Positions 20,229 through 47,893 of a DNA stretch of 64,000 bases are shown here, piece by piece. The stretch is from IMG/VR virus record IMGVR_UViG_3300045973_000169, positions 62,001-126,000 of that record; one strand, 5' to 3'. The notes under the pieces were generated by a model. That model saw nothing but the letters and a program-made list of their open reading frames with translations. It was not told where the DNA came from and searched no databases. Within the stretch, counting starts at the first letter, position 1. Every line of letters starts with the position of its first letter. A program made the position numbers and the translations under genes.

Positions 20229-20999
20229 ATGCAAGATAGAGAATATATAATTTATTGTTTTTTAGATGAGAATAATAAACCTTATTATGTTGGACAAACT
20301 TATAATCTTAAGATGAGATTAAATGCCCATAATCAATTTATTTTAGATATTGAAGAAAAAAGATTACCATCTAAATACCCATATTATCGTAAGGCTAGAG
20401 ATTTATTTAAAAATGGTATAGGATTAAAAGTAAATATATTAGAAAATAATCTTACCAAAAAAGAAGCAGACTTAAAAGAGTCTGAATATATTAGTAAGTT
20501 TAGAAATGATATTTCCTGTAAGTTATTAAATATTTTAGCTGGTGGTGAATTTAATCAAAGAAATAAATTTGTGTCTGATGAAACAAAAAAGAAAATAAGT
20601 GAATCTAAAAAAGGGAAAAAACTTACAGAAAAACATAAAGAGTCTTTAAGAAATTGTGATAGGAAACAAAGGAACTGGACAGAAGAAGATAAAATTAAAT
20701 ATGCTAAAATGGCAAAAATAAATTTATTGAATAAACAAACTCCAGAGAGTATTGAAAAGATGCGTCAGTCTAAAGTTGGGCAAAAACATTCTGAAGAAAC
20801 TAAAAGTAAAATAGCAAGATTTGGGAAAGATCATAAAAGAGCAAAGCACTATTTGATTATTGCCCCAGATGGGACTAATTACGATATTCATGGACTTTCT
20901 TCTTTTTGTAAAGAATTTGATTTAAACCAAAGTGGACTATGGCATGCTCTTAATAAAGGAAATGGTAAATATAAGGGATGGCAAATTCAAGAACTGTAA
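20229..20999 (+). CDS. GIY-YIG homing endonuclease with NUMOD3 repeats
   Basis: IIYCF...YYVGQT..R...E...LLN; SDETKKKIS / HSEETKSKI repeats. Confidence 0.9.
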   Translation: MQDREYIIYCFLDENNKPYYVGQTYNLKMRLNAHNQFILDIEEKRLPSKYPYYRKARDLFKNGIGLKVNILENNLTKKEADLKESEYISKFRNDISCKLLNILAGGEFNQRNKFVSDETKKKISESKKGKKLTEKHKESLRNCDRKQRNWTEEDKIKYAKMAKINLLNKQTPESIEKMRQSKVGQKHSEETKSKIARFGKDHKRAKHYLIIAPDGTNYDIHGLSSFCKEFDLNQSGLWHALNKGNGKYKGWQIQEL

Positions 21000-22168
21000 A
21001 GTTAATTTATGTAAATGGGATTGGGGCTAACAATAATAAGTTCTATGATATGATCGATACAGAAGACGGATATTTTACTATTAAATATGGTCGAGTAGGA
21101 TCTACTGAAACTGTAGATAAGAAAGCTATTGGTAAATGGGATTCTGTATATAGAGAGAAGACTCGTAAGGGTTATAAAGATATTACTAAGTTGTATATAG
21201 AAGAGAAAGTGGATGTAGTTGATTTTGCTGATATTAGTGATTATGCTATTAAAGAGATAATTGCTAAATTGCAAGCTTATTCTAAGAAACAAGTAACTAC
21301 ATTCTATACTATCTCTGCTGAAAAAGTAACTAAGAAACAAGTAGATGAAGCTCAAACTATTTTAGATGGATTGATCCCATGTAAAGATGTTGAGTGTGCC
21401 AATAAGCTACTTATTGATTTATACTCTGTTATACCTAGAGCTATGAGTCATGTTAAGCATCATTTACTTTCTAGTTTTGAACAGAAAACTCTTGATAATA
21501 TGATAGCTAGAGAACAATCTATTCTTGACTCAATGGCTTCTTCTGTTAAGCAGGTTGAACTTGTAAGAGAGAATATAGATTCTAGTAAGACTTTACTTGA
21601 TGCTCTTGGTGTAGAAGTATATCAAACAATGCCTAGTGATGTAGATCTTATTAAAATGAAATTAGATAACTTAGTTGATAGATATTTGAACTCATTTAGA
21701 GTAGTTAACAAAAAGACTCAGGTTAAGTTTGATAATTTTGTAAATAAAATTGATAACAAAAAGACAGAGTTATTCTGGCATGGGAGTAGAAATGAAAACT
21801 GGATTTCAATACTTGAAACTGGTTTGGTCTTACGTCCGACCAATGCTGTTATTTCTGGGAAGATGTTTGGGTATGGCACCTACTTCGCAGACAAGGCTCA
21901 AAAATCCCTAGGATATACCTCTTCTTATGGTTCACTGTGGGCTAAAGGAAGTTCTAATGAAGCCTATATGTCATTGTTTGATGTCCATGTTGGGAATCAA
22001 TATATAGTTGAACAGAGTGAATCTAACCTTGATGCACAAAAGTTAAAGGCTAAAGGTAACTTTCATTCTACTTTTGCTAAAGCTGGTAGATCATTAATGA
22101 ACAATGAATATATTGTTTATGATGAAGATCAATCTACAATTAAATATCTTGTACAATTAAAAGGATAA
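20978..22168 (+). CDS. WGR-domain PARP-like ADP-ribosyltransferase
   Basis: NKFY...YGRVG (WGR); LY..IP regulatory-like region; catalytic WHGS, GKMFGYGTYFAD..KS.GY, NEYIVY (H-Y-E triad). Confidence 0.9.
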   Translation: MANSRTVKLIYVNGIGANNNKFYDMIDTEDGYFTIKYGRVGSTETVDKKAIGKWDSVYREKTRKGYKDITKLYIEEKVDVVDFADISDYAIKEIIAKLQAYSKKQVTTFYTISAEKVTKKQVDEAQTILDGLIPCKDVECANKLLIDLYSVIPRAMSHVKHHLLSSFEQKTLDNMIAREQSILDSMASSVKQVELVRENIDSSKTLLDALGVEVYQTMPSDVDLIKMKLDNLVDRYLNSFRVVNKKTQVKFDNFVNKIDNKKTELFWHGSRNENWISILETGLVLRPTNAVISGKMFGYGTYFADKAQKSLGYTSSYGSLWAKGSSNEAYMSLFDVHVGNQYIVEQSESNLDAQKLKAKGNFHSTFAKAGRSLMNNEYIVYDEDQSTIKYLVQLKG

Positions 22169-23980: not shown

Positions 23981-24036
23981 TCCCGACATTTAAAAGATAC
24001 TTACAAAGGCTCTAACTAAATGTTGGGGCCTTTTTT
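23981..24036 (+). promoter_or_regulatory. terminator/antiterminator switch (attenuator) upstream of tRNA array
   Basis: Terminator aaaggctctaac/gttggggccttt + T6; competing helix cccgacattta (23982-23992) / taaatgttggg (24017-24027). Confidence 0.75.
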
Positions 24037-24235: not shown

Positions 24236-24318
24236 GGATCATGAGGAGCATAGGTGACTCTAGACGGCTGTAACCCGTTGCCTCACGGTACCCTGTTCGA
24301 ACCGGGGATGATCCACCA
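24236..24318 (+). tRNA. tRNA-Tyr(GTA)
   Basis: Cloverleaf, gacgg-ctGTAac-ccgtt, encoded CCA. Confidence 0.9.
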
Positions 24319-24328
24319 ATAATATTAA

Positions 24329-24402
24329 CAGTGTGTACCGGGAGTCTGGTCCCCGCCTTGCCTTGGACGCAAGAAACGCAGGTTCAAATCCTGCCGCACT
24401 GA
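24329..24402 (+). tRNA. tRNA-Pro(TGG)
   Basis: cttgc-ctTGGac-gcaag; T-arm gcagg-ttcaaat-cctgc. Confidence 0.88.
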
Positions 24403-24480
24403 CATTGCCTTTTGACCCAATCATAGGGTTTAGACCAAAGTAGTTATTAACAATTAGAAATAAATTCTAGGAGTTATATT

Positions 24481-25077
24481 ATGCTGTGTTACTATGGTTG
24501 TGGTCAAGAGGCCGGGTTTGAATTAAAGAATGGAAGACATATATGTTCTTCATCATCAAATCAATGTCCAGTACAAAAAAAGAAAAATTCAGAGAATAGT
24601 AATAATAGATATTTTAAAATTAATGCCTCTGCTATTAAAAGTAAATGTAAGTTCTGTAACAAAGAGATTTCATCTACTAGTATTAAAGTTCATGAATTAA
24701 ATTGTTTTCTTAATCCAGAAAATATTAAATTATGTCCTGTATGTAATAAGCCAATTAAAAATTTTAGAAAATCAAATACATGCTCTTATGGTTGTTCGAA
24801 TACATTTTTTAGAAGCGGTAAAGATCATCCAAATTGGAAAGAGGATATAGATTGTGGATATAGAAAAATATGTTTTAGTGTCCATAAAAAAGAATGTATT
24901 ATATGTGGAGAAGTTAAAATAGTTGCAGTACATCATTTTGATGAAAATAAAAATAATAATAATATTGATAATTTAATTCCTTTATGTCCTACACACCATG
25001 TATATTGGCATTCAGGATATAAAAATGAAATTGAACAAAAAGTAATTGATTATAGAAATAAATTTAAATCTGCTTAA
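24481..25077 (+). CDS. HNH homing endonuclease
   Basis: HPNWK, CIICG...VHH.DEN..NN...NLIPLCPTHH. Confidence 0.9.
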   Translation: MLCYYGCGQEAGFELKNGRHICSSSSNQCPVQKKKNSENSNNRYFKINASAIKSKCKFCNKEISSTSIKVHELNCFLNPENIKLCPVCNKPIKNFRKSNTCSYGCSNTFFRSGKDHPNWKEDIDCGYRKICFSVHKKECIICGEVKIVAVHHFDENKNNNNIDNLIPLCPTHHVYWHSGYKNEIEQKVIDYRNKFKSA

Positions 25078-25173
25078 GTTCCAGTACATTCAATTATGCT
25101 GGGGAACGAGCACTAAAGAAGTGTAAGCTGAGTCTAAGAATGAGAGGTAGGTTGGCAGATTTAATAATAATGT

Positions 25174-25246
25174 TGCGGATTGTAAGTAATGGTTAACGAA
25201 AAGGCTCATAACCTTCTTCTTGTGAGTTCGAGTCTCGCATCCGCTA
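25174..25246 (+). tRNA. tRNA-Met(CAT), initiator-like 1:72 mismatch
   Basis: aagg-ctCATaa-cctt; T-arm gtgag-ttcgagt-ctcgc. Confidence 0.8.
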
Positions 25247-25269
25247 CTATGTTATTTTAGAGGAGGAAT

Positions 25270-25602
25270 ATGGAAAAGGCTTGTAAACATCATGGATTAA
25301 CTAAGTTTAGTCTACAAAAGTCAAATGGCAGAGAAACTTATTATTGTGTTAAATGTTATATGGAAAGACAGAATCGTACAAGGAATAATAAGAAAGAACA
25401 AGCTTTAACCTATAAAGGTGGTAAATGTTCAATCTGTGGGTATGATAAATGCAGTGCTGCTTTAGATTTCCATCATCTTAATCCTCTAGAAAAAGAAAGT
25501 AAAAATGATTTAAGAAATCTATCATGGGATAGATTAAAGATTGAACTTGATAAATGCATTCTTGTATGTGCTAATTGTCATAGAGAAATACATTTTAAAT
25601 AA
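25270..25602 (+). CDS. HNH endonuclease
   Basis: GGKCSICGY...ALDFHH..P..K...LVCANCHREIH. Confidence 0.9.
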   Translation: MEKACKHHGLTKFSLQKSNGRETYYCVKCYMERQNRTRNNKKEQALTYKGGKCSICGYDKCSAALDFHHLNPLEKESKNDLRNLSWDRLKIELDKCILVCANCHREIHFK

Positions 25603-25607
25603 GATAT

Positions 25608-25682
25608 GCACCGTGGGACGGCAGGAGTGGTCAGTAGCCTTTCACGCTACTCAGATGGGTTCGATACCCATACGGTGTACCA
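25608..25682 (+). tRNA. tRNA-Glu(TTC)
   Basis: gtagc-ctTTCac-gctac; CCA. Confidence 0.9.
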
Positions 25683-25686
25683 ATAA

Positions 25687-25764
25687 GCGGATGTACAGGT
25701 GAAGGGGCCACCAGGAGCCTTCCAAGCTTCAGATCGCGGGGTTCGACTCCCCACATCCGCTCCA
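25687..25764 (+). tRNA. tRNA-Gly(TCC)
   Basis: ggagc-ctTCCaa-gcttc; CCA. Confidence 0.88.
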
Positions 25765-25768
25765 AATT

Positions 25769-25844
25769 GCCTTTATAGCTCAGTGTGTAGAGCGTAGCCC
25801 TGAAGAGGCTAGCGTCCGGGGTTCGAATCCCTGTGAAGGCACCA
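25769..25844 (+). tRNA. tRNA-Phe(GAA)
   Basis: tagcc-ctGAAga-ggcta; CCA. Confidence 0.92.
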
Positions 25845-25849
25845 TTAAT

Positions 25850-25930
25850 GCCCTAGTAGCCACCGAAACTACGAATTTCGAGTTAGGTAATGGACTGCAA
25901 ATGCTAGTTCGAATCTAGTCTGGGGCTCCA
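25850..25930 (+). tRNA. atypical tRNA-Arg(ACG), no canonical D-arm, long variable region
   Basis: Acceptor gccctag/ctggggc, cgaaa-ctACGaa-tttcg, T-arm gctag-ttcgaat-ctagt, CCA. Confidence 0.7.
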
Positions 25931-25936
25931 AAATAT

Positions 25937-26023
25937 AGTACGGTGTCCGAGTGGCTGAAGGAACTGGTCTCCAAAACCAGAGAGATGACTCCAACGTGGG
26001 TTCGAATCCTACCCGTACTGCCA
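25937..26023 (+). tRNA. tRNA-Trp(CCA) with long variable arm
   Basis: ctggt-ctCCAaa-accag; variable arm gag-atga-ctc; CCA. Confidence 0.85.
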
Positions 26024-26041
26024 AATTAAAAAGGAAATAAA

Positions 26042-26419
26042 ATGCAAAAATTGGTTAGTAGTAAAGAAGAATATGTAAATATGAATGACTTTGTTTATGA
26101 TAAAAAGAAAATTTATGTTTATAGGCAGATAACTCCTAAGTTTGATAACTCAAGTGAGAAAGAAGTAAAATGGGGAATATTCTCTGAACATGCTGGTGAG
26201 TATGGTGGATATGGATTCATCATGTTAGGTAATTGTTCTAATGGATGGACATCTAAGCCAGAATGGAATAAAGATGTTAAAGAATATTTTTCTAAGATGA
26301 TTAAAAATAGCGGTTGTACTATAAGTGATATTTTAATTTTTAAAGATCTTAAAGATTTTTTAGGTTGGATGTCATATGAAGTTGGTGGTACAATTGGTTA
26401 TTTAAAATATTGTGAATAG
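26042..26419 (+). CDS. hypothetical protein within tRNA array
   Basis: ORF with SD aagga. Confidence 0.6.
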   Translation: MQKLVSSKEEYVNMNDFVYDKKKIYVYRQITPKFDNSSEKEVKWGIFSEHAGEYGGYGFIMLGNCSNGWTSKPEWNKDVKEYFSKMIKNSGCTISDILIFKDLKDFLGWMSYEVGGTIGYLKYCE

Positions 26420-26424
26420 TAAAT

Positions 26425-26520
26425 GGAAGAGCTGACCTCAAAGGCAGCGGGGCCCAGTCTTGAAAACTGGTAGCCGTCAGCAATGGCGGCGTGAGGGTTC
26501 GAATCCCTACTCTTCCTCCA
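26425..26520 (+). tRNA. tRNA-Ser(TGA)
   Basis: ccagt-ctTGAaa-actgg; long variable arm; CCA. Confidence 0.9.
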
Positions 26521-26526
26521 TTAAAT

Positions 26527-26558
26527 AGAAGGTTACCCAAGAGGACAAAGAGAAGTTC
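26527..26558 (+). pseudogene. orphan 5' fragment of a tRNA-Ser-type gene
   Basis: agaaggttacccaagagg..aagagaag resembles a Ser tRNA 5' half; ends just before GTTATTAACA. Confidence 0.55.
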
Positions 26559-26596
26559 CGTTATTAACACTTAGGTATAATCTAAGGAGTTAATAT

Positions 26597-27115
26597 ATGA
26601 AAATCTGCTTAAAATGTAATAAAGAGTTTAAGTCTTCTGGTATTATAGATGGCACTAAAAAGAAATTTGGGAATAGAAAATATTGTCTTGAGTGTTCTCC
26701 ATGGGGAAAGCATAATACACAGCCTCTTATAGAAACTGGGAAAATTAAAGAAGAGATAAGTGAACGTAGATGTTCAAGGTGCAATGAGGCAAAAGATATA
26801 TCTAGTTTTTATAGAAGTGGAGAAAAGCTTCTATCTATTTGTAAAGAATGCCATAAGAAATTAAGTAAAAAACTCTATGATGCTAAGATTGCTTCAATGG
26901 ATGAGTATAAGGCTAATTTAGGATGCTCAAAATGTGGGGATAAGAGACCTTATGTTTTAGATTTTCATCACAAAGATCCTCAAGAAAAAGAATTTTCTAT
27001 TTCTGATAAAGCCAGAGCGTCATTAGTTGTATTGTCAAAAGAACTTGAGAAATGTGTTTGTTTGTGTGCTAATTGCCATAGAGAAGAACATTATTTACTA
27101 AAAATGGAAGGGTAG
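26597..27115 (+). CDS. HNH homing endonuclease; last codons overlap tRNA-Ser(GCT)
   Basis: CSKCG...VLDFHH.DP..K...CLCANCHREEH. Confidence 0.9.
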   Translation: MKICLKCNKEFKSSGIIDGTKKKFGNRKYCLECSPWGKHNTQPLIETGKIKEEISERRCSRCNEAKDISSFYRSGEKLLSICKECHKKLSKKLYDAKIASMDEYKANLGCSKCGDKRPYVLDFHHKDPQEKEFSISDKARASLVVLSKELEKCVCLCANCHREEHYLLKMEG

Positions 27116-27193
27116 CCTAATTGGTAGGGAAGCTGTTTGCTAAACAGTCGGGATGTAAAAGTTCTGCGGGTTCAAGTCCCGCTCCTTCCTCCA
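27106..27193 (+). tRNA. tRNA-Ser(GCT)
   Basis: gctgt-ttGCTaa-acagt; long variable arm; CCA. Confidence 0.88.
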
Positions 27194-27212
27194 GCCTTCT
27201 GCCAAAAGTTTT

Positions 27213-27291
27213 GGTCTGTTAGTTTAGTCTGGCCTAAAGCACCTGCCTGTCGAGCAGGTTATCATCGGTTCAAATCCGATACAGACCGCCA
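27213..27291 (+). tRNA. tRNA-Asp(GTC)
   Basis: cctgc-ctGTCga-gcagg; CCA. Confidence 0.9.
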
Positions 27292-27299
27292 TACATTTA

Positions 27300-27375
27300 G
27301 GGGAATTAGCTCATTTGGTAGAGCAGGGGCTTTGCAAGTCTCAGGTGATCAGTTCGACTCTGATATTCTCCACCA
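27300..27375 (+). tRNA. tRNA-Ala(TGC)
   Basis: G3-U70 pair, ggggc-ttTGCaa-gtctc; CCA. Confidence 0.92.
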
Positions 27376-27381
27376 TAATAA

Positions 27382-27579
27382 AAGGGGTTAGTCCAGCGTG
27401 GTCAAAATTGCTTTAACATAAGGAGACATCCTAGTTCTAGTAAGATTTGATATTTTGAAATATGAGAATATTAGTAACCTTGGATCGTATGCCAATGAAG
27501 TGCTAAAAAGGTAATAAAGTAGACTTAAGACATTTACATTAAATTGTAATGAACATTGGTTAGAGTCCAGTACCCTTTG
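27382..27579 (+). ncRNA. miniature tmRNA-like / tRNA-like RNA
   Basis: Acceptor aaggggt/acccttt with G3-U, T-arm attgg-ttagagt-ccagt, P2-like helix attgctttaa/ttaaattgtaat, ~120-nt interior. Confidence 0.5.
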
Positions 27580-27583
27580 TCGA

Positions 27584-27662
27584 ATTTGTTTGTCTGGCCT
27601 GATTGGGAAGCACCTCCCTTACAAGGAGGCATATATAGGTTCGAATCCTATGACAAATACCA
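27584..27662 (+). tRNA. tRNA-Val(TAC)
   Basis: cctcc-ctTACaa-ggagg; CCA. Confidence 0.85.
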
Positions 27663-27663
27663 T

Positions 27664-27739
27664 AGTCTCATAGCTCAATTGGTAGAGCACCGCCCTGATA
27701 AGGCGGAGGTCGACGGTTCGAATCCATCTGAGGCTACCA
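27664..27739 (+). tRNA. tRNA-Ile(GAT)
   Basis: ccgcc-ctGATaa-ggcgg; CCA. Confidence 0.92.
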
Positions 27740-27743
27740 TTAT

Positions 27744-27819
27744 TGCCTCTTAGCTCAGTTGGTAGAGCATCAGATTTTGATTCTGAGTGTCGTGTGTTCG
27801 AATCACACAGGGGCTTCCA
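27744..27819 (+). tRNA. tRNA-Gln(TTG)
   Basis: tcaga-ttTTGat-tctga; CCA. Confidence 0.9.
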
Positions 27820-27823
27820 AAAT

Positions 27824-27899
27824 GCCGGTGTAGCTCAGTCGTTAGAGCGCCTCCCTTGTAAGGAGGATGTCGCGGGTTAGATTCCTGTCTCCGGCTCCA
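27824..27899 (+). tRNA. tRNA-Thr(TGT)
   Basis: cctcc-ctTGTaa-ggagg; CCA. Confidence 0.9.
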
Positions 27900-27907
27900 A
27901 AATATGT

Positions 27908-27993
27908 GGTGACTTAACGCAACGTGGATAGCGGTTCGACTGTGACTCGAATGCCGAAAGGATTACCGAGTTCGAATCTCGGAGGTCACACCA
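27908..27993 (+). tRNA. tRNA-His(GTG) with extended variable arm
   Basis: ttcga-ctGTGac-tcgaa; G-1; variable cc-gaaa-gg; CCA. Confidence 0.85.
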
Positions 27994-28380
27994 AATTAAA
28001 AAGGAAATAAAATGAGAAATATTAAAATCTCACATATTGCAAGTAATCATGTTGACTTTACATGTTGGAATTGTTATACATCTTTTGACTTAGAAGTTGG
28101 AGATGAAGTTATATGTCCTAAATGTAAAAATGTTCCTAGGGGAAAATAAAATGAATTATAGAATTGAACCAGTAGAATTTGTTAGACCTCGAAGTTGGGG
28201 GGATGTAGATCCTGTTACAAAAGAATTAACTGGTAGATATAAAGGGAAAACTCCTGGAGCATGTCAACCTGATGAATCTGTTATAACAGAAGAAAATGGA
28301 TTTACTGATATAGTTGTGCTAGGGCCTGGATTTAGTCCTGCAGAATATATTAGAAATAAAGAATTAAATAAGTAGTTTGT

Positions 28381-28413
28381 GGCTGGGTGGCGGAATGGTA
28401 GACGCAGCAGCCT
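28381..28413 (+). pseudogene. orphan 5' half of a tRNA-Leu-type gene
   Basis: ggctggg-tg-gcg-gaatggtaga-cgc-a-gcagc-ct stops at the anticodon loop, 3 nt before GTTATTAACA. Confidence 0.75.
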
Positions 28414-28451
28414 ATGGTTATTAACATGTATCCCTAAATCAAGAGGTACAT

Positions 28452-28895
28452 GTGAGAATTGATATACTAGAAAGAAAAAATGAAATTTTAATATGGATTT
28501 CAGAAAATAAATCAAAAGAATTTATCGCTAGAAAACTTAATTGTAAAAATGAAACATTAACCTCATATCTTAAAAAAATGGGGATTGAATATTATGGGAA
28601 TAAATCTGGCAAAGGTATGGCAGATTTAAAGACTAGGAAAAGTGCATTAGAATATCTCAAAGGCACTTATATTAAATCCCATCTTCTTAAATTAAAATTA
28701 ATAGAAGACAAAATAAAAGAACATAAATGCGAAAGATGCTTAATTTCTACATGGTTTGAACAATTGATTCCTTTAGAATTACATCATAAAGATGGAAACC
28801 ATTATAACAATGAATTAATAAATCTTGAATTATTATGCCCAAATTGCCATGCACAGTGTGATAATAATTCAGGGAAAGCAGTAAGAAAGAAATAA
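28452..28895 (+). CDS. HNH homing endonuclease
   Basis: KCERC...PLELHHKDGNHYNNELINLELLCPNCH. Confidence 0.92.
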   Translation: MRIDILERKNEILIWISENKSKEFIARKLNCKNETLTSYLKKMGIEYYGNKSGKGMADLKTRKSALEYLKGTYIKSHLLKLKLIEDKIKEHKCERCLISTWFEQLIPLELHHKDGNHYNNELINLELLCPNCHAQCDNNSGKAVRKK

Positions 28896-28898
28896 TTT

Positions 28899-28984
28899 GC
28901 CGGAGTGGTGGAATGGCAGACACCCCAGACTTAGAATCTGGTGTCCGTAAGGGCGTACTGGTTCGAGTCCAGTCTTCGGTACCA
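28899..28984 (+). tRNA. tRNA-Leu(TAG)
   Basis: ccaga-ctTAGaa-tctgg; long variable arm; CCA. Confidence 0.92.
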
Positions 28985-28992
28985 AATAAATA

Positions 28993-29058
28993 AGAGAAGT
29001 TACAGCAAACATTATATAAACTTTGACTTTAACTCAAACATAAAATAAATACTTCTCT
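28993..29058 (+). ncRNA. small anticodon-stem-loop mimic (UUA loop)
   Basis: agagaagt/acttctct closing stem, ACAGCAA, tttga-ctTTAac-tcaaa; no D or T arm. Confidence 0.45.
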
Positions 29059-29224
29059 GTCTTTTTTAATGGATAATGTTTAGTTATCTAGTTTTTAACT
29101 CTGTGGAGTGCTCGGTAATCCGTTGAATTCTCAACCGCTTAAATCGCACTCCTTCCACCATAACAAGCCATGGTGGAAATAAGAGATAGGAGTAATCCTA
29201 TTTTTTTTATAATTTTTAAAATAT

Positions 29225-29311
29225 TCCTCAGTGGTGAAATTGGTAGCCACAGCACACTGTTAATGTGCCGACGAAAGTCAACTGCTCGTTCGAGTCGGGC
29301 CTGGGGAGCCA
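29225..29311 (+). tRNA. tRNA-Asn(GTT) with extended variable arm
   Basis: gcaca-ctGTTaa-tgtgc; variable gac-gaaa-gtc; CCA. Confidence 0.88.
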
Positions 29312-29456: not shown

Positions 29457-29495
29457 TAGAGTTATAGGGCCTTCCTATAGCTCTTTTTCTTTTTG
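29457..29495 (+). terminator. intrinsic terminator ending tRNA region
   Basis: agagttatagg-gcctt-cctatagctct + T-run. Confidence 0.8.
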
Positions 29496-30893: not shown

Positions 30894-31583
30894 ATGTACT
30901 AAAGAAATTCCAATGATAAAAGATGCTATGGGTCAATGGGAACATGAAGGGGCTAAATGTATTGGTTCTAACTTTGATGATACTAAAGAGTATTGGGAAT
31001 GTTCTGATTGTGGTACTAAATGGAATATATATTATGAAAATTAAAGCTTATGGACTATGGTACTTAGCTAATAGAATGAAGGTATTATAATGGAAACTAT
31101 AATTGAGTTTGAACGTATTGGATATAAATGTAAAACAATTTCTTCAATCCAAACAATATATAAAACAAAAAAAGAATTTAGTGATAATTATACTATAGAA
31201 GAAGCTTTATCTGGAGAAGAGAAGGTTGGCTATCATTATAAATTTTATCTTGAAGATAATATTAAATATACATCGTCAATCGAAATTACATCATTAGAAA
31301 AAATTATATTTAAAGAAGATGCTAAGTATGAAATTAAAATACTTATTAAAGAGTTGGGATAAATAATGATAGTAGTTTATGAAGATACAATACTCGAGAA
31401 AATTAATAAAATAATTGTTGATAATAAGAGACCAATTTCATATATAGAATTAACTGATGTGGAATTTCTTCAATTTAGTGTTTTCTCTGGGCTTGGGACT
31501 CCAAAAATTATTAAAGATAAAAATGGAGATAACCATATTGGTCTATTTTATAAAGGTACAATTATCCGAAAGGAAAGAGTCTA

Positions 31584-33119: not shown

Positions 33120-34083
33120 GAAACTTTTCTTCACCGCTGGTGATAATGATGGATGTGCTTATTATAGGGCTAAATTACCTGCAGAGTTTCTAGGATATGA
33201 TTATAATTATGGGTTTCCAGTTCAGGATACAACAAAATTAGATGAAGCAGATATTATATTTATCCAAAGAGCTACACATGAAGAGTTCTTAAATATAATT
33301 CCTAGTTTAAAAAAAGCAGGGAAGAAAGTAGTTTATGAAGTAGATGATAACTTATGGGAGATCCCAGCATCTAATTCTGCTCATAGAGGATTTAATACTA
33401 AGGTATTAAAACTTATGGTCAAGATTATTAGATTATGTGATGCTGTTACTGTATCTACAATTCCATTAAGAAATTATTTTATTAATAATCTATTTCATGA
33501 TAATGTACATGTAATCCCTAACTTTATTCCTGATGTATTTCCTAAGAGAACTAACTTTAATGCTAAGACAACTATTGGATTTTGTGGTACTCCTACACAT
33601 AGATGGGACTTTGATAACCATTTAGTAAAAGCTTTAAGGTCTCTTAAAGAGAAATGTAGATTAGTTTTTGTTGGATATAATCCTATCCAAAATGATGCTG
33701 ATGAATTCATTAAATGGATTCCTTCTAATGAATACCATGAAACTATCAATAATCTGAACTTTGATATTACAGTTGCTCCTTTATTAGATAATGAATTTAA
33801 TAGATGTAAGAGTAATATTAAGTTTCTTGAGTTTGGAGCCATGGGAACTTGTTTTATTGGATCAAAAGTATATCCTTATAGTGAGACTGTTAAACCTGAT
33901 AATGGGTTTCTCATAAATTATAATAAAGATTGGTTTGAATTACTAGATACTTTAGTAGAAAATTTTGGAGCTACTTTACAAGTTGGCGAAAATGCTAGAG
34001 AATTTGTTAAAGACAATTTCACATATAAATATAATGGTCAATTTATAATTGACAAATATAAAGAACTATTGGATACATTATGA
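33106..34083 (+). CDS. glycosyltransferase (GT-B)
   Basis: GCAYYR..LP, FIQR, YEVDDNLW, VTVST, APL.DNEFNRCKSNIKFLE. Confidence 0.85.
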   Translation: MIFDKKLFFTAGDNDGCAYYRAKLPAEFLGYDYNYGFPVQDTTKLDEADIIFIQRATHEEFLNIIPSLKKAGKKVVYEVDDNLWEIPASNSAHRGFNTKVLKLMVKIIRLCDAVTVSTIPLRNYFINNLFHDNVHVIPNFIPDVFPKRTNFNAKTTIGFCGTPTHRWDFDNHLVKALRSLKEKCRLVFVGYNPIQNDADEFIKWIPSNEYHETINNLNFDITVAPLLDNEFNRCKSNIKFLEFGAMGTCFIGSKVYPYSETVKPDNGFLINYNKDWFELLDTLVENFGATLQVGENAREFVKDNFTYKYNGQFIIDKYKELLDTL

Positions 34084-34706
34084 GTTTAATGCAATACCAA
34101 GGTGTAAAAACATACAAAGGATCAAAAGTGCCGAATTCATTAGAATTGTTTATAAATTATTGTACTACGATTGAATTGCCAAGAGTGTTAGAGCTTGGTG
34201 TATATCAATCAATGCCTGGTAGAAGTACTATGCATAAGACATGGGTACCACATGCAACTGTATTCCATGGGACAGATATTGAAGCTGGAGAAGATGTAGA
34301 CTTTGTTGCTGATGTCCATAAACTTTCTGAGGTATGTGGAGAAAAGTCATATGATGTTATCATTAGTTGTTCTACTTTTGAACATTTTAAATATCCACAT
34401 ATTGCTGCTCTTGAGATATCAAAAGTATTAAGTGATAAAGGGGCTATATTTATTCAGACACATTCTACATTTCCTATTCATGCTTATCCATATGATTATT
34501 TCAGATTTACTGAAGAAGCTCTATCTGGATGTTTTGGTACATTAAATGGGATACAAGTTAAGAATACAGATTATACTTTCCCTGCCACAATTAGTTCTGC
34601 TGCAGATGGTGGTCCTCATCCAGCTTGGCTTAATGTTAATTTATTTGGGATTAAAACACATGAGACTCCAAAAGATTATTTATATGAATTGGATACAGAA
34701 CTATGA
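34080..34706 (+). CDS. class I SAM-dependent methyltransferase
   Basis: VLELG, GTDI..G.DVD.V.D, STFEH, H.YP.DYFRFT. Confidence 0.85.
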   Translation: MSLMQYQGVKTYKGSKVPNSLELFINYCTTIELPRVLELGVYQSMPGRSTMHKTWVPHATVFHGTDIEAGEDVDFVADVHKLSEVCGEKSYDVIISCSTFEHFKYPHIAALEISKVLSDKGAIFIQTHSTFPIHAYPYDYFRFTEEALSGCFGTLNGIQVKNTDYTFPATISSAADGGPHPAWLNVNLFGIKTHETPKDYLYELDTEL

Positions 34707-41932: not shown

Positions 41933-42721
41933 ATGAAAGTTAAGTTAATTCATGCTACTCCATTAGATATCTTAGTTCAGGCTATCCGTAAATGCTATGA
42001 TAGTGGAAGTAAAAGTGATTCTGGATACTTTGAAAAGAATGAACAACTATTAGTTAATGAGAAGTATAAGTATAGATTAGGCGAGAAAGATGAAGCTCTC
42101 ATTAAGAGAGTAATTGAAGCTGGACATACATCTACTCTTGAACATATTAATTTTACATTTGACCTAGGTGGATACAGCAGAGCTTTATTGCAAGAGAAAT
42201 CACGTCATCGTCATGCTGCTGTAAGTGAACGTTCAACTAGATATTGTTTAAAGAAGCTCAAGGATATTAAGTCTTTAGTTACTGTACAAAGATTTCCATC
42301 TGGACAAGAAATCTTTATGTGTAATAAGCAAGAAGCTGCAAAGTATCTTGTTCTTACTGGAGATGAGGATGTAGACAATCTTTCTATTGAGGCTCTTGAT
42401 AGACTAAGACAATTGCTTGTTCGTAAACCTGAGCTTCGTAATGATGTAGCTAAATATCCTATTCCTGATTCATTGAGAACAGAATGTATCTTTACTATTA
42501 ATGCTAGGAGTCTAAGGAATTTATTTAGTCTTAGGATCAGTAAACAGGCTTTATGGGAATTCCAAAAGTTATGTTGCTATATGTATGAATCAATCCCTTT
42601 CCCATATAAATTTCTAGTTGATGATTTAGTTAATAAAGAGATATATGAATTCTGGATGGGTAGTGACAAACCAGCAGATGGTGGTCATGCTAACTTGTTT
42701 GAGAGGTATTATAGAGTATGA
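41933..42721 (+). CDS. thyX: flavin-dependent thymidylate synthase
   Basis: GHTSTLEH, SRALLQE.SRHR...SERSTRY, NARSLRN..SLR....A.WE. Confidence 0.93.
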   Translation: MKVKLIHATPLDILVQAIRKCYDSGSKSDSGYFEKNEQLLVNEKYKYRLGEKDEALIKRVIEAGHTSTLEHINFTFDLGGYSRALLQEKSRHRHAAVSERSTRYCLKKLKDIKSLVTVQRFPSGQEIFMCNKQEAAKYLVLTGDEDVDNLSIEALDRLRQLLVRKPELRNDVAKYPIPDSLRTECIFTINARSLRNLFSLRISKQALWEFQKLCCYMYESIPFPYKFLVDDLVNKEIYEFWMGSDKPADGGHANLFERYYRV

Positions 42722-43890
42722 GTACTTGTGTCCCGCTTCATGTTCATTCTGAAGGTTCAGTAAGAGATAGCATTAATAAAATATCAAATTATGTACAAAA
42801 ATGTGTTGAACTAAAATATACTGCTGCTAGTATTTCAGATCATGGATTCATGGGATATAATTATAAGTTCTATAAAGAATGTAAAAAGTATAATATAAAA
42901 CCTATTCTTGGACAAGAATTCTATTATACCCATGATAGAGCTGATAAGGGGTTAAATTATCATTTAGTCTTATACGCCATGAATGAGAAAGGGTATCAGA
43001 ACCTATGTAAATTAAGTTCTGACGCGTTTATTAATGGATTCTATAGGAAGGCTAGGACAGATAAAACAATCCTTGCAGAGTACTCTGAAGGCTTAATTTG
43101 CACTCCTGCTTGCTGCTTTGGTATGGCACAACAATATATTGTAAATGGTGAGATGGATAATGCAATCCAAGAAGTAAAAGATTTACAATCTATCTTTAAA
43201 GAGAATTTCTATCTTGAGATTCATGATCATGGGATTGAAGATGAAATTAAAATTAAGGATGAGTTTCGTAATATAGGGAATGACTTAAATATTAAAGTAG
43301 TCCCTGGAATTGATGTCCATTATACTAATAAAGAAGATCAGAAGATTCATGGTATCTTTAAGAATATTGCTTATGCTTCTGGAGGAGAAAAGGATAGTTC
43401 CTTTAATGGGACTGATTTCCATGTTCTATCTCCTGAAGAGATGGCAGTTAAATTTACTAAAGAAGAATTAGATAATACTCTTGAAATAGCAGATAAGTGT
43501 AATGTAGATTTTAAATTTACTGGTTACTTCTTACCTACATATGATATTCCTGAAAAAGAGTTTGATACATATGAATATCTTAGAACTATATGCTTCAGAG
43601 AACTTAAAAAGAAAGGTTTAGATTCTAACCCTCTATATGTAGAGAGATTAGAGTTTGAACTTAATATGCTCCATCTGGCTGACTTAGAGAACTATCTTCT
43701 TATAGTGTCTGACTATTGTAATTGGGCTAAGAATAATGATGTCCCTGTTGGACCTGGACGAGGATCTATGGGTGGTTCTATTGTAAGTTGGTTAACCAAT
43801 ATTACAGGAGTTGATCCTTTGAAATATGACTTACTTTTTGCAAGAGCTATCAACCCAGGTAGAAGTTTACAATTTGATTTTGGAGTCTAA
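42718..43890 (+). CDS. dnaE: DNA polymerase III alpha, N-terminal piece (PHP + start of palm)
   Basis: LHVHS..S..D, SDHG, KPILGQE, HL, DVHY, GPGRGS, ITGVDPLKYDLLFARAINPGR, then stop. Confidence 0.9.
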   Translation: MSTCVPLHVHSEGSVRDSINKISNYVQKCVELKYTAASISDHGFMGYNYKFYKECKKYNIKPILGQEFYYTHDRADKGLNYHLVLYAMNEKGYQNLCKLSSDAFINGFYRKARTDKTILAEYSEGLICTPACCFGMAQQYIVNGEMDNAIQEVKDLQSIFKENFYLEIHDHGIEDEIKIKDEFRNIGNDLNIKVVPGIDVHYTNKEDQKIHGIFKNIAYASGGEKDSSFNGTDFHVLSPEEMAVKFTKEELDNTLEIADKCNVDFKFTGYFLPTYDIPEKEFDTYEYLRTICFRELKKKGLDSNPLYVERLEFELNMLHLADLENYLLIVSDYCNWAKNNDVPVGPGRGSMGGSIVSWLTNITGVDPLKYDLLFARAINPGRSLQFDFGV

Positions 43891-45538: not shown

Positions 45539-47893
45539 GTGATTAAATACCATATAGATAGACCTATAGTTGAATATGTACAAGCTAATGAACGTTTTTT
45601 AGAATTAGATGATAATGAACATATTACACTATATAATGAAATTAAAAATGCTGTTCTTCAAGGAATAGACGATAAAATATTAAGTAAAGTATTTGATGAA
45701 GCTCCCTATATGAATGATAGCAGTATTAATTCCTATCTATTATGGGTACTCCATTTGACAAAAGATAAGCCTACTGGATTACAGAAGATTAAATCTCCTG
45801 GATCTTATTGTGATATCGACTTAGACTTCTCTCAAGAGAAGAGAGAAAAAGTATTTGATTATCTTGCTGAGAAATATGGCTCTACTAGAGTAAGTCATAT
45901 TGCTACATTTGGAACTATGGGAGCCAAGGCTGCTATCAGAAACTCTGCTAGGGCCTTGAGCTACCCAACTGAACTCCAGAATAAAGTAGCTAAATTTATA
46001 TCAGATGAACCTAAAGCAACTATTCAAGGGAGTATTGATGCTTCTAAAGAATTCCAAGATATGATTAAGAAATCTGAACAAGTTCAACATATTATATCTG
46101 TTGCAAAGAAGCTGGAAGGATTACCTAATTCACTTAGTGTCCATGCTTCTGCTGGTATTATATCTGATGTTGCAACTACTGATAGAGTTCCGATGATGGT
46201 ATCTGCTAAGAAGAATGATCCTATCACTGGGATTAGTGGATCTAAAGTTGTTTCTCAATTTGATATGAAAGATGTTGAAAATGCTGGTTTATTAAAATAT
46301 GATATTCTTGGTCTTAAGACTCTTGATATTATAAATGAAACAGTTAAGATAATTAAAAGGAATAAGGATATAGATATCGATATTGAATCGATTGATATGA
46401 ATGATCCTGGAATCTATAAACTTCTTAATGCTGGACATGTAACTATAGTATTCCAATTTGATGGAACTGCTGCTGCATATCTACCTAAGATTAAACCTCA
46501 AAATATAGATGAAATATCAGACTTAACTTCAATACTCCGTCCCGGACCGATGAGCATGGGAATGGTTGAGAGGTATGCTGAAGCTAAATTTGAGAATAAG
46601 AAATATGAATATGAATTGAAAGATCAAGCTCTTATTGCTAAAGTTTGGGAAATATGTTATCGTTCATATGGATTAATGATATACCAAGAACAAACAATTA
46701 AATGTTTTGTTGAGATAGCAGGATTCAATGAAATCGCTGCTGATAATGCTAGAAGAGCTATGGGTAAAAAGTTACCTGAAGAGATGGCTAAATTAGAAGG
46801 AGCGTTTGTTGAAGGTGGAATTAAAAAAGGCTATAACGAGAATGACCTTAAGACTTTATTTAAAGGGATCGCTGGATTTGCAGAATATGGGTTTAATGCA
46901 TCGCATGCAGTATGTTATTCTTTTATTACTTGTCAAACTGCTTGGTTATCCCATTATTATCCGTTAGAGTTCTTTACTGCTGCTATGACTATTGATGCAG
47001 GGAATACTGATGATATTAGACGTTATATCAAATCAGCTAAAGAAAGAAATATAATTCTTTCACCTCCTGATATTAATAAATCTGATAGTATGTTTACTAT
47101 TAAAGACGAATCTATTGTTTTTGGACTTAATGCTATTAAAGGTGTTGGTCCATCTACATCGAAAAAGATTATGGCTCGTAGACCTAAAAAAGGATATACT
47201 TCTCTTGGTCATTTTATTAGGCGTAATCTCGATTTGATTAATTCAAAGATACTTGAATCATATACGAAAGCTGGATGTTTTAAATCATTTGGTTATAATA
47301 AGCAATCTGTTTTAAATAGTATCCAGAATATATTGGATTTTATTAGTGTCTTGAAAGAGTATGATAAGTACAATACTTTCTTTGATCTTTGTAACATCTC
47401 ACTTGACAATTTTATAGATTCATGTATAATGAAAGATTCCCAAAAAGAAGACACATTATCTTATGAGATTGATTCTTTAGGTCTTTATATTAGTAAACAT
47501 CCTATGGATGTATATGATCTTAAAGGAATGAATGATCCTTCTTTTGTAGAATATTATGAGAATGAAGATGAATTTATCACTATAGGGTGTCTATCTGGAA
47601 TAGAAGTTAGAAAGACTAAAGCCAAACTAAATATGTGTAAGTTTAATATTGCATCTAGCATGTATAATCTTCCATGTATTATATTTCCTAAAGCATATTC
47701 TAAATATGTTAATGACCCTACTATCGCTGAAGGTAGAATGGTATGTGTCCAAGGAAGAATAAAAATTTCTGATACTGGTAGAGAATTAATTGTGAATGAT
47801 ATTCATGATAATATCGATAGGTATCTTGTTAGAAAAGTAATTAATAAAAATGAGTTTCCAATAAACTCCAAATTAACATTTATATTAGGATAA
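45539..47893 (+). CDS. dnaE: DNA polymerase III alpha, C-terminal piece (palm/fingers/HhH/OB)
   Basis: CDIDLDF, HAS.G, KYDILGL.TL, RPGP, IYQEQ, RRAMGKK, YGFNASHA, PDIN.S, GL..IKGVG, OB fold. Confidence 0.92.
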   Translation: MIKYHIDRPIVEYVQANERFLELDDNEHITLYNEIKNAVLQGIDDKILSKVFDEAPYMNDSSINSYLLWVLHLTKDKPTGLQKIKSPGSYCDIDLDFSQEKREKVFDYLAEKYGSTRVSHIATFGTMGAKAAIRNSARALSYPTELQNKVAKFISDEPKATIQGSIDASKEFQDMIKKSEQVQHIISVAKKLEGLPNSLSVHASAGIISDVATTDRVPMMVSAKKNDPITGISGSKVVSQFDMKDVENAGLLKYDILGLKTLDIINETVKIIKRNKDIDIDIESIDMNDPGIYKLLNAGHVTIVFQFDGTAAAYLPKIKPQNIDEISDLTSILRPGPMSMGMVERYAEAKFENKKYEYELKDQALIAKVWEICYRSYGLMIYQEQTIKCFVEIAGFNEIAADNARRAMGKKLPEEMAKLEGAFVEGGIKKGYNENDLKTLFKGIAGFAEYGFNASHAVCYSFITCQTAWLSHYYPLEFFTAAMTIDAGNTDDIRRYIKSAKERNIILSPPDINKSDSMFTIKDESIVFGLNAIKGVGPSTSKKIMARRPKKGYTSLGHFIRRNLDLINSKILESYTKAGCFKSFGYNKQSVLNSIQNILDFISVLKEYDKYNTFFDLCNISLDNFIDSCIMKDSQKEDTLSYEIDSLGLYISKHPMDVYDLKGMNDPSFVEYYENEDEFITIGCLSGIEVRKTKAKLNMCKFNIASSMYNLPCIIFPKAYSKYVNDPTIAEGRMVCVQGRIKISDTGRELIVNDIHDNIDRYLVRKVINKNEFPINSKLTFILG

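What the first reader, a model, noticed from the sequence alone, without database searches (positions are those of the whole stretch)
26527..28984. HNH genes inserted into tRNA genes, leaving orphan 5' halves
Seen: a Leu-type 5' half (28381-28413) stops exactly at the anticodon loop, followed by motif + HNH and then a complete tRNA-Leu(TAG). A Ser-type 5' fragment (26527-58) precedes an HNH whose last codons and stop lie inside the 5' end of tRNA-Ser(GCT) (27106-27115). A possible third stub, gccttttgacccaatcataggg (24407-28), precedes the HNH at 24481. The Leu stub does not pair with the downstream 3' half, so the alleles have diverged. Inference: the same insert-and-replace logic applied to tRNA genes, with anticodon arms as homing targets.
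Basis: partly seen in the sequence, partly recalled or inferred. Interest (0 to 1): 0.6.

Follow-up and report, generated by a model that had tools for sequence, protein, structure and literature searches.

The report
HNH-tRNA cassettes split phage tRNA genes
In the tRNA gene cluster of a 207-kb pond phage, selfish HNH nuclease genes that sit next to an intact tRNA lie inside older tRNA genes and have left dead half-genes behind; nucleases in phage tRNA clusters are known, but this nested "cut and replace" layout appears not to have been described.

Summary
The Leu-type 5' half (28381-28413) is clearly tRNA-derived: a truncated Rfam tRNA hit, 3rd best hit genome-wide for a 5'-half HMM, and alignment p<1/2000. 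The Ser-type fragment (26527-26559) fails the covariance model. However, it has a class-II D-arm (p=0.011). Its missing 3' acceptor strand plus G73-CCA lies at 27194-27204, directly behind the intact tRNA-Ser(GCT), with compensatory changes. The third stub (24407-28) is not supported.

The strongest evidence comes from other phages. Homologues of the Leu-linked HNH always sit beside a tRNA-Leu(TAG). Two contigs that are 99% identical differ only at this site. One (L130) has an intact tRNA-Leu(TAG). The other (L024) has 548 nt, made of a spare tRNA-Leu(TAG) plus the HNH gene, in place of 8 nt of the anticodon stem-loop (tRNA positions 30-37). A third, divergent phage (L026) carries the same cassette at 97% identity with a broken HNH.

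So "insert and replace at the anticodon loop" is supported as a recurrent homing process. Cleavage specificity is inferred, not shown. No empty site was found for the window's own loci.

Verdict: a new variant of a known kind (T4 SegB and T5 F-Tfl type nucleases in tRNA clusters).

The parts
26527..26559 (+). 5' part of a broken class-II (Ser-type) tRNA gene: acceptor strand, decayed D-arm, 5' strand of the anticodon stem
   Evidence: It starts 6 nt after tRNA-Ser(TGA), the usual spacing in this array. In-register D-arm similarity to relatives' Tyr/Ser tRNAs, p=0.011. It pairs 7/7 with 27194-27200. The Rfam truncated test was negative.
26560..26569 (+). Leader motif GTTATTAACA of the HNH gene
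   Evidence: 10 copies in the window vs 0.42 expected, all on the + strand. 14 of 19 genomic copies precede homing-endonuclease ORFs.
26562..26595 (+). Leader hairpin that pairs the end of the motif with the ribosome-site region
   Evidence: MFE -10.6 kcal/mol, z = -3.09.
26597..27115 (+). HNH homing endonuclease gene (172 aa); its last codons and stop lie inside tRNA-Ser(GCT)
   Evidence: phrog_2255 HNH endonuclease, E=1.3e-39. ORF coordinates. Homologues in 16 of 17 loci lie in tRNA arrays, often overlapping the downstream tRNA.
27106..27193 (+). Intact inner tRNA-Ser(GCT), the only gene for this anticodon in the genome
   Evidence: ARAGORN. Rfam 50.4 bits. Genome-wide tRNA list.
27194..27204 (+). 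3' acceptor strand + G73 + CCA of the broken outer tRNA-Ser
   Evidence: It pairs 7/7 (one G-U) with 26527-26533. It differs from the inner tRNA at positions 66 and 72, exactly opposite the stub's differences at positions 7 and 1. Only 9 such strings occur in 413,276 positions (sequence).
28381..28413 (+). 5' half of a broken tRNA-Leu gene (positions 1-33, ending in the anticodon loop)
   Evidence: Rfam tRNA model 1-32, 14.8 bits, cut at the 3' side. nhmmer rank 3 genome-wide. Alignment p<1/2000. 9 of the 10 best matches are Leu. No 3' partner anywhere in the genome.
28417..28426 (+). Leader motif GTTATTAACA
28424..28453 (+). Leader hairpin covering the ribosome site and the GTG start
   Evidence: MFE -11.4 kcal/mol, z = -3.05, 0 of 200 shuffles as stable.
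28452..28895 (+). HNH homing endonuclease gene (147 aa) with an N-terminal helix-turn-helix-like region
   Evidence: phrog_14736 / phrog_10822 HNH, E=4.9e-24. Weak GerE/HTH and HNH Pfam hits. Homologues are always next to tRNA-Leu(TAG).
28899..28984 (+). Intact inner tRNA-Leu(TAG), the only gene for this anticodon in the genome
   Evidence: ARAGORN. Rfam 52.9 bits. Genome-wide list.
24443..25077 (+). Motif plus a 198-aa HNH gene directly downstream of tRNA-Pro(TGG); no convincing tRNA stub in front of it
   Evidence: phrog_1271 HNH. Homologues L047-L049 also follow tRNA-Pro(TGG). The stub tests were negative.
25270..25602 (+). 110-aa HNH gene between a Met-like tRNA (25176-25244) and tRNA-Glu (25608); intergenic, no stub
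   Evidence: phrog_2255, E=8.4e-30. Rfam 23.3 bits for the Met-like tRNA; ARAGORN with relaxed settings.

Best explanation
The array holds free-standing HNH homing-endonuclease genes, each linked to an intact tRNA gene.

Two units sit inside the wreck of an older tRNA gene of the same amino-acid family. Each unit consists of leader motif, hairpin, HNH ORF and abutting tRNA, and these are 26560-27193 (Ser) and 28417-28984 (Leu).

Likely mechanism (inferred):
1. The HNH enzyme cuts or nicks a cassette-free tRNA gene in the anticodon arm during mixed infection.
2. Repair copies the HNH gene together with its neighbouring tRNA from the donor genome.
3. The crossover points fall inside the target tRNA gene, or are made by illegitimate joining. 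The target's 5' part, and sometimes its 3' part, therefore stay behind as dead fragments and can travel on with the cassette.
4. The carried tRNA restores decoding. Its different anticodon stem would protect it from recutting.

Expression control (inferred from layout). A conserved leader hairpin hides the ribosome site. The ORF's stop lies at or inside the downstream tRNA, so RNase P processing would cut the message, as proposed for T4 segB.

Shown: the anatomy; tRNA origin of the Leu stub; both ends of the Ser outer gene; linkage of an HNH lineage to one tRNA; an empty/filled site pair and horizontal spread in the homologous lineage.

Inferred: the cleavage site, the immunity of the inner tRNA, the repair route and the regulation.
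For: Anatomy. HNH identity.

Leu stub is tRNA-derived.

Ser outer gene: 5' fragment plus a 3' acceptor-G73-CCA remnant with compensatory differences.

Lineage-to-tRNA linkage:
- The 147-aa HNH lineage is linked to tRNA-Leu(TAG) in L023-L027.
- The 198-aa lineage is linked to tRNA-Pro(TGG) in L047-L049 and in the window.

Nested architecture with both halves present:
- L023: acceptor strands 7/7 complementary; orphan 3' half at nhmmer E=1.3e-4.
- L024: orphan 3' half = Rfam model 36-71 at 14.3 bits, nhmmer E=1e-3.

Empty versus filled site:
- L130 has an intact tRNA-Leu(TAG) at 3967-4048.
- Its flanks are 99.17% and 99.65% identical to L024.
- L024 carries 548 nt in place of 8 nt at tRNA positions 30-37.

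Horizontal transfer and decay:
- The L024 and L026 cassettes are 97.4% identical over 618 nt, while the flanks are 70-84% identical or unalignable.
- The L026 HNH is frameshifted and carries a stop.

The inner tRNAs are the genome's only Leu(TAG) and Ser(GCT) genes.

The ORF end abuts or overlaps the downstream tRNA in the window (-10, +3, +5 nt) and in many homologues (-55 to +36 nt). This matches the segB/tRNA-Arg arrangement described in PMC2330249.

Leader hairpins have z <= -2.7 in 6 of 9 leaders.
Against: - No empty-site allele or close relative of this phage was found. Support for the window's own two loci therefore rests on anatomy and analogy.
- The Ser fragment is not recognised by the covariance model and its D-stem no longer pairs.
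- The Leu locus has no 3' remnant.
- The Leu stub's best matches are CAA/TAA isoacceptors. It may be a destroyed paralogue rather than a replaced allele.
- Fragments can be imported with the cassette. The break may therefore have happened in another genome.
- The third stub fails every test.
- No enzymology: the cut site and the immunity of the inner tRNA are untested.
- In L024 the inner and target anticodon loops are identical. Discrimination would have to rest on the stems.
Confidence: 0.75

Rival explanations
1. Insert and destroy, not replace. The array once had tandem isoacceptor genes (for example Leu-CAA next to Leu-TAG, and a third Ser gene). The HNH gene landed in one of them, and the intact neighbour is simply the next resident gene, not cargo.
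For: The Leu stub's three best matches are CAA, TAA and CAA isoacceptors. The genome has no Leu(CAA) gene. Leu-Leu and Ser-Ser neighbours are common in relatives' arrays.
Against: The HNH lineage is tied to Leu(TAG) across phages. In L024 versus L130 the spare tRNA is clearly part of the inserted 548 nt, and the target is itself a Leu(TAG) gene. For Ser, the outer 3' remnant lies beyond the inner tRNA, so the inner tRNA is nested inside the broken gene.
Confidence: 0.15
2. The stubs are ordinary tRNA pseudogenes from duplication and decay. Their position next to HNH genes is coincidence.
For: Orphan tRNA halves and odd tRNA-like genes are frequent in these arrays.
Against: Both supported stubs end within 0-3 nt of the HNH leader motif. 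Upstream 40-mers of the other 17 motif copies show no significant tRNA similarity. The same nested layout recurs with the homologous HNH in L023 and L024, and is absent from the 99%-identical L130.
Confidence: 0.05
3. The halves belong to a functional split or intron-containing tRNA. The HNH gene sits in an intervening sequence that is removed from the RNA.
For: L023 has 14-15-nt inverted repeats at both junctions that could bring the halves together. Group I introns with endonuclease genes are known in bacterial tRNA anticodon loops (from memory).
Against: No ribozyme family matches at E<=10. Only about 35 nt lie before the ORFs and 3 nt or less after them. The Leu stub has no 3' partner in the genome. 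The Ser outer gene lacks its anticodon 3' strand, variable arm and T arm. ARAGORN with introns allowed finds no such gene.
Confidence: 0.03
4. The resemblance of the stubs to tRNA is chance.
For: The Ser fragment and the third stub are not recognised by Rfam. The sequences are short.
Against: Leu stub: p<1/2000, rank 3 genome-wide, and a compensated D-stem pair relative to the inner tRNA. Ser: an acceptor complement plus GCCA at exactly the expected place.
Confidence: 0.02

Closest known systems
T4 SegB (GIY-YIG homing endonuclease in the T4 tRNA cluster; PMC2330249, PMC13096335)
   Same: A free-standing endonuclease gene inside a phage tRNA cluster. It recognises tRNA-gene sequence. Homing carries neighbouring tRNA genes along. 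The ORF's end abuts a tRNA, so tRNA processing cuts the message.
   Different: SegB belongs to a different nuclease family. It recognises the T-arm motif shared by many tRNAs and shows no isotype preference. Broken target halves flanking a nuclease-plus-tRNA unit are not mentioned in the parts of the two papers I read.
T5 F-TflI, F-TflII, F-TflIV (HNH endonucleases encoded in the T5 tRNA gene region; Akulenko et al. 2004, cited in PMC2330249)
   Same: HNH-family ORFs interspersed among phage tRNA genes. Expression is proposed to be limited by tRNA processing of the primary transcript.
   Different: I could not read the original paper. No nested broken tRNA gene or cargo tRNA is mentioned in the text available. 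Sequence relationship to the window's HNH genes was not tested.
Endonuclease genes in group I introns of tRNA anticodon loops (e.g. cyanobacterial tRNA-fMet intron; from memory)
   Same: The insertion point is the anticodon loop of a tRNA gene, and an endonuclease is the cargo.
   Different: There the intron splices out and the host tRNA stays functional. Here there is no ribozyme, the target gene is killed, and function is supplied by a second, complete tRNA gene.
Genes-in-pieces created by free-standing endonuclease genes (e.g. MobE splitting nrdA in phage Aeh1; from memory), and synthetic cleave-and-rescue gene drives (from memory)
   Same: A selfish nuclease gene interrupts or cuts a needed gene. 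In cleave-and-rescue, the element carries a resistant copy of that gene.
   Different: In Aeh1 the two pieces remain functional. Cleave-and-rescue is an engineered design in animals. Here the arrangement is natural, in phages, and the rescued gene is a tRNA.

Membership tests
Free-standing HNH homing endonuclease gene | HNH / His-Me finger nuclease domain with catalytic residues | tested here: met
   PHROG HNH families, E from 3.6e-12 to 1.3e-39 for all four ORFs. Pfam HNH above its cut-off for 25270; the others give only sub-threshold hits to HNH-type families (HNH or HNH_2). HH...N...CxxCH motifs are visible in the translations.
Free-standing HNH homing endonuclease gene | Not embedded in an intron or intein | tested here: met
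   No intron family at E<=10. Only about 35 nt of leader, and 3 nt or less (or an overlap) after the ORF.
Free-standing HNH homing endonuclease gene | Presence/absence polymorphism at one site between otherwise near-identical genomes | tested here: met
   Met for the homologous lineage: L130 (empty) versus L024 (filled), flanks 99.2-99.7% identical. Not found for the window's own loci.
Free-standing HNH homing endonuclease gene | Horizontal spread and degeneration (homing cycle) | tested here: met
   The L024 and L026 cassettes are 97.4% identical in divergent genomes. The L026 ORF is frameshifted and carries a stop.
Free-standing HNH homing endonuclease gene | Site-specific cleavage of the cassette-free allele and biased inheritance in mixed infection | not testable with these tools
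   Needs protein and phage isolates.
tRNA (Rfam RF00005), as the origin of the stubs | Aligns to the covariance model as a truncated tRNA | tested here: inconclusive
   Leu stub: the only family hit, model positions 1-32, 14.8 bits, below the 29-bit gathering score as expected for a half. Ser stub: no hit. Third stub: no hit. Candidate at G000 33880-33910: no hit.
tRNA (Rfam RF00005), as the origin of the stubs | A complementary 3' acceptor strand with discriminator and CCA exists | tested here: met
   Met for Ser (27194-27204). Not met for Leu.
Group I intron in a tRNA gene | Ribozyme core, and both exons able to form a full tRNA | tested here: not met
   No intron match. ARAGORN with introns up to 3 kb finds no such gene at these sites. 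Exon parts are missing.
Integrase-mediated island at a tRNA gene | Integrase gene, and a direct repeat of the tRNA 3' end | tested here: not met
   Neighbouring ORFs are HNH genes or small unknowns with no recombinase domain. 5' parts are left behind rather than duplicated 3' ends.
Split tRNA genes (Nanoarchaeum type) | A separate 3' half elsewhere whose acceptor strand pairs with the 5' half | tested here: not met
   No T-arm-preceded complement of the Leu stub's acceptor strand anywhere in the genome.

The most novel reading that the evidence does not exclude
HNH-plus-tRNA units are a distinct, widespread class of natural 'cleave and rescue' elements in large phages. Each nuclease lineage is specialised on one tRNA isoacceptor gene. 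It cuts that gene in the anticodon arm and carries a resistant copy. This makes its own loss costly and continually overwrites and reshuffles phage tRNA repertoires. The many duplicated, fragmentary and odd tRNA genes in these arrays would then be its footprints.
Probability: 0.4. Interest if true: 0.7.

Novelty: new variant of a known kind. Interest (0 to 1): 0.6.

Why it matters
Phage tRNA arrays are now seen as tools against host tRNA-cutting defences and for codon supply. How they turn over is poorly understood.

An endonuclease that kills one tRNA gene while delivering a replacement would explain several features:
- why nuclease genes and tRNA genes are so tightly interleaved;
- why arrays hold duplicates and dead halves;
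- how tRNA alleles sweep between unrelated phages.

The L130/L024 pair gives a ready-made natural substrate and product for testing an HNH enzyme with a tRNA-gene target. The shared leader motif points to common control of all selfish nuclease genes in one genome.

Tried and rejected
- Near-identical relatives: none found. Megablast against phages, neighbouring ORFs and a stub 24-mer in viral contigs, a stub 21-mer in metagenome contigs, and exact-protein look-ups that return only the source sample.
- Sequencing runs: only one pond metagenome holds the window, probably the source. The 'joints' are other organisms' tRNAs at 80% likeness. No RNA run exists, so expression of the halves is untested.
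- Split tRNA: no 3' partner for the Leu stub.
- Intron: no ribozyme. ARAGORN in intron mode finds nothing at the HNH sites.
- My first Rfam test of the L024 5' stub used a range that cut off the acceptor strand and gave nothing. The HMM and L130 settle that stub instead.
- A fourth candidate stub outside the window (G000 33880-33910) stays weak: p=0.10 and no Rfam hit.
- The word search for close homologues of the 172-aa HNH gave nothing above 45% full-length identity, so no Ser-specific comparison was possible.
- No remnant of endonuclease coding sequence in the ORF-free gaps of the array.
- Sigma-70-like promoters are not enriched in the array.

Only genetic code 11 was used.
Full report
CONTEXT
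The window is bases 62001-126000 of a 206,638-bp IMG/VR virus record from a pond metagenome, 33.8% G+C. It encodes a split DnaE-like polymerase, a primase-helicase, ribonucleotide reductase, a UvsX-like recombinase and a PARP-like protein. It has no near relative among deposited phages.

Window 24236-29311 is a tRNA array.
- It holds 17 ARAGORN genes plus sub-threshold ones.
- Terminator-like hairpins bracket it at 24005-24033 and 29458-29484.
- Four ORFs in it are HNH endonucleases of three PHROG groups: 24481-25077, 25270-25602, 26597-27115 and 28452-28895.

THE OBSERVATION
The Leu-type half at 28381-28413 is real.
- Given only that stretch, Rfam returns a single family: tRNA, model positions 1-32, cut at the 3' side, 14.8 bits.
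- An HMM of 5' halves built only from class-II tRNAs of related phages ranks it third in the whole genome, between genuine tRNA-Leu and tRNA-Ser genes.
- Its best local alignment to relatives' 5' halves (score 17) exceeds all 2000 random genome 40-mers.
- Nine of its ten best matches among 283 phage tRNAs are tRNA-Leu.
- Compared with the intact tRNA-Leu(TAG) downstream, it shows a compensated D-stem pair (read).
- Its acceptor strand does not pair with that tRNA's 3' strand, and no 3' partner exists anywhere in the genome.

The Ser-type fragment at 26527-26559 is weaker by itself.
- The covariance model does not see it and its D-stem no longer pairs.
- It starts 6 nt after tRNA-Ser(TGA), the normal spacing in the array.
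- It has an in-register class-II D-arm match (p=0.011), and its five best matches are all Tyr or Ser.

The decisive point for Ser is new.
- Directly behind the intact tRNA-Ser(GCT), at 27194-27204, lies a second 3' acceptor strand followed by G and CCA.
- It pairs 7/7 (one G-U) with the fragment's first seven bases.
- It differs from the inner tRNA's 3' strand at positions 66 and 72, exactly opposite the two positions (7 and 1) where the fragment differs from the inner tRNA.
- Only 9 strings in 413,276 positions could pair like this and carry NCCA, and only 3 with G73.
- So the leader, the HNH gene and tRNA-Ser(GCT) are nested between the two ends of a broken Ser-type gene.

The third stub (24407-24428) fails every test. 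It is not conserved in the homologous locus L047.

COMPARATIVE EVIDENCE
Homologues of the 147-aa HNH (52-59% identity) were found in five other viral contigs. All lie next to a tRNA-Leu(TAG).
- In L023 and L025 the order is HNH then tRNA, as in the window.
- In L024 and L026 the order is tRNA then HNH.

L023 keeps both halves of a broken outer tRNA-Leu around the unit.
- The acceptor strands are 7/7 complementary.
- The orphan 3' part scores nhmmer E=1.3e-4.

L024 likewise has an outer 5' half, then 22 nt, an inner tRNA-Leu(TAG), the HNH gene, and an outer 3' half. The 3' half matches Rfam model 36-71 at 14.3 bits, with nhmmer E=1e-3.

A 24-mer from that 3' half retrieved L130, a piece of a 187-kb metagenome contig. 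The comparison with L024 is the key result.
- L130 1112-3995 is 99.17% identical to L024 1-2885.
- L130 4004-5732 is 99.65% identical to L024 3434-5162.
- Between these blocks, L130 has 8 nt that complete an intact tRNA-Leu(TAG) (3967-4048).
- L024 has 548 nt there instead.
- The replaced 8 nt are tRNA positions 30-37: the last two bases of the anticodon stem's 5' strand and six of the seven loop bases, including the anticodon.
- This is an empty site and a filled site of one locus.

The cassette has also moved and decayed.
- L024 and L026 share the cassette, including the adjoining remnants of the outer halves, at 97.4% over 618 nt.
- Their flanks are 70-84% identical or unalignable.
- The L026 HNH carries a frameshift and a stop.
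- L025 looks like a decayed version of the L023 arrangement.

Together these give presence/absence polymorphism, horizontal transfer and degeneration, the expected signs of a homing element. They also show that stub fragments can be carried along into new genomes.

The other HNH lineages behave similarly.
- Homologues of the 198-aa HNH follow tRNA-Pro(TGG) in all three loci found, as in the window.
- Relatives of the 172-aa HNH (phrog_2255 type) lie in tRNA arrays in 16 of 17 loci.
- The genome itself holds four paralogues of the 172-aa type, 33-40% identical, all beside tRNA genes.

EXPRESSION FEATURES
Across the homologues, the HNH stop lies from 55 nt inside to 36 nt before the downstream tRNA. 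In the window the values are -10, +3 and +5 nt. For T4 segB, the stop abuts tRNA-Arg and tRNA processing cuts between the last codon and the stop. The same kind of control was proposed for the T5 endonuclease ORFs in its tRNA cluster (PMC2330249).

Three of the four HNH genes are preceded by GTTATTAACA, an interrupted palindrome.
- It occurs 10 times in the window against 0.42 expected and 19 times in the genome.
- It is always in the orientation of the gene downstream.
- 14 of the 19 copies precede endonuclease ORFs of HNH, GIY-YIG and Vsr-like families.
- The closest relative, L002, has it too.
- The last bases of the motif pair with the ribosome-site and start region, with z <= -2.7 in six of nine leaders.

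This resembles the T4 scheme in which a late promoter inside a ribosome-site hairpin limits translation to late transcripts. That comparison is from memory and is an inference. The motif could equally be an operator.

WHAT IT MOST LIKELY IS
These are free-standing HNH homing-endonuclease genes that move as a unit with an intact tRNA gene. They enter cognate tRNA genes at the anticodon stem-loop. The target is destroyed and the cargo tRNA replaces it. Consistent with this, the inner Leu(TAG) and Ser(GCT) are the genome's only genes for those anticodons.

The leftover halves are scars. They were made either in this genome or in an earlier host of the cassette.

Steps not shown:
- that the enzyme cuts there;
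- that the inner tRNA is resistant. Its anticodon stem differs from the target's, but in L024 the loops are identical;
- which repair route produces the junctions.

RIVALS
'Insert and destroy a neighbouring isoacceptor' is the serious rival for the window's Leu locus, since the stub resembles CAA/TAA genes most. Unrelated pseudogenes, a spliced split tRNA and chance are each poorly supported (see the Rival explanations section).

COMPARISON WITH KNOWN SYSTEMS
Endonuclease genes in phage tRNA clusters are established.
- T4 SegB recognises the T-arm motif and drags neighbouring tRNA genes along.
- SegB homologues are widely associated with tRNAs, without isotype preference.
- T5 encodes HNH enzymes in its tRNA region.

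Four full-text searches found no description of a nuclease-plus-tRNA unit nested in a broken tRNA gene. The held library is incomplete, so this is not proof of novelty. I rate the finding a new variant of a known kind.

LIMITS
- No close relative of this phage exists in the collections searched.
- Only one DNA run holds it and no RNA run does.
- The Ser case rests on short sequences.

Noticed in passing
window 5858, 14390, 19125, 20189, 23815, 24443, 26560, 28417, 30094, 49283 (+ strand); 9 more sites elsewhere in G000: GTTATTAACA (interrupted palindrome GTTAnTAAC) lies 25-40 nt upstream of 14 homing-endonuclease ORFs from unrelated families (HNH, GIY-YIG, Vsr-like/DUF723). A hairpin pairs its 3' end with the ribosome-site and start region. 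It looks like a genome-wide control element for selfish nuclease genes, and the closest relative L002 also has it.
   Followed up: partly
window 25937-26023, 27909-27993, 29225-29311; also L009, L010, L019, L022: tRNAs with a long variable arm (class-II shape) carry anticodons of class-I amino acids: CCA (Trp, on a Ser-like body with G73), GTG (His), and GTT (Asn, on a Leu-like D-arm). Relatives have similar long Asn, Lys, Thr and Ile tRNAs. Their charging identity is unclear.
   Followed up: no
window 27382-27579: A tRNA-like gene whose 5' part and 3' part are separated by about 113-120 nt with no ORF and no endonuclease remnant. The 3' part matches Rfam model 25-71 at 13.2 bits, and the acceptor strands pair 7/7. 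It may be another interrupted tRNA gene.
   Followed up: partly
G000 33762-33884 and 31399-31530 (outside the window; L016 11763-11885 and 9400-9531): tRNA-like genes that ARAGORN only fits with inserts of about 40 nt at positions 31-33 of the anticodon loop. Relatives have Rfam tRNA hits of 119 and 133 nt (G005 46199-46317, G002 55064-55196).
   Followed up: no
G000 33880-33910 plus the HNH ORF at 33961-34461 (L016 11880-12461): A further phrog_2255 HNH gene with the leader motif is preceded by a weak tRNA-like 5' fragment with a good D-arm (p=0.10, no Rfam hit). It starts 3-4 nt after a tRNA-like gene, and no tRNA follows the ORF.
   Followed up: partly
window 42718-43890 and 45539-47893: A DnaE-like DNA polymerase is split into two ORFs that match consecutive parts of one PHROG profile, with 1.65 kb between them.
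   Followed up: no
L023 about 2921-2935 and 3544-3559: The junctions of the HNH-tRNA unit with the broken outer tRNA-Leu carry a 14-15-nt A/T-rich inverted repeat. Its meaning is unknown: helix in the RNA, recombination site or chance.
   Followed up: no
L041 2878-3542: A phrog_2255-type HNH gene is flanked on both sides by complete tRNA-Phe(GAA) genes. The same array has Glu-Glu and Asp-Asp pairs in which one member is unusually long.
   Followed up: no
window 28985-29224: A 240-nt ORF-free stretch after tRNA-Leu(TAG) holds several long hairpins and a terminator-like end. No Rfam family matches it.
   Followed up: no
window 20978-22168: A 396-aa WGR/PARP-like protein (phrog_23333). It is conserved at 31-57% identity in eight large viral contigs and served as the handle to find relatives.
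   Followed up: partly
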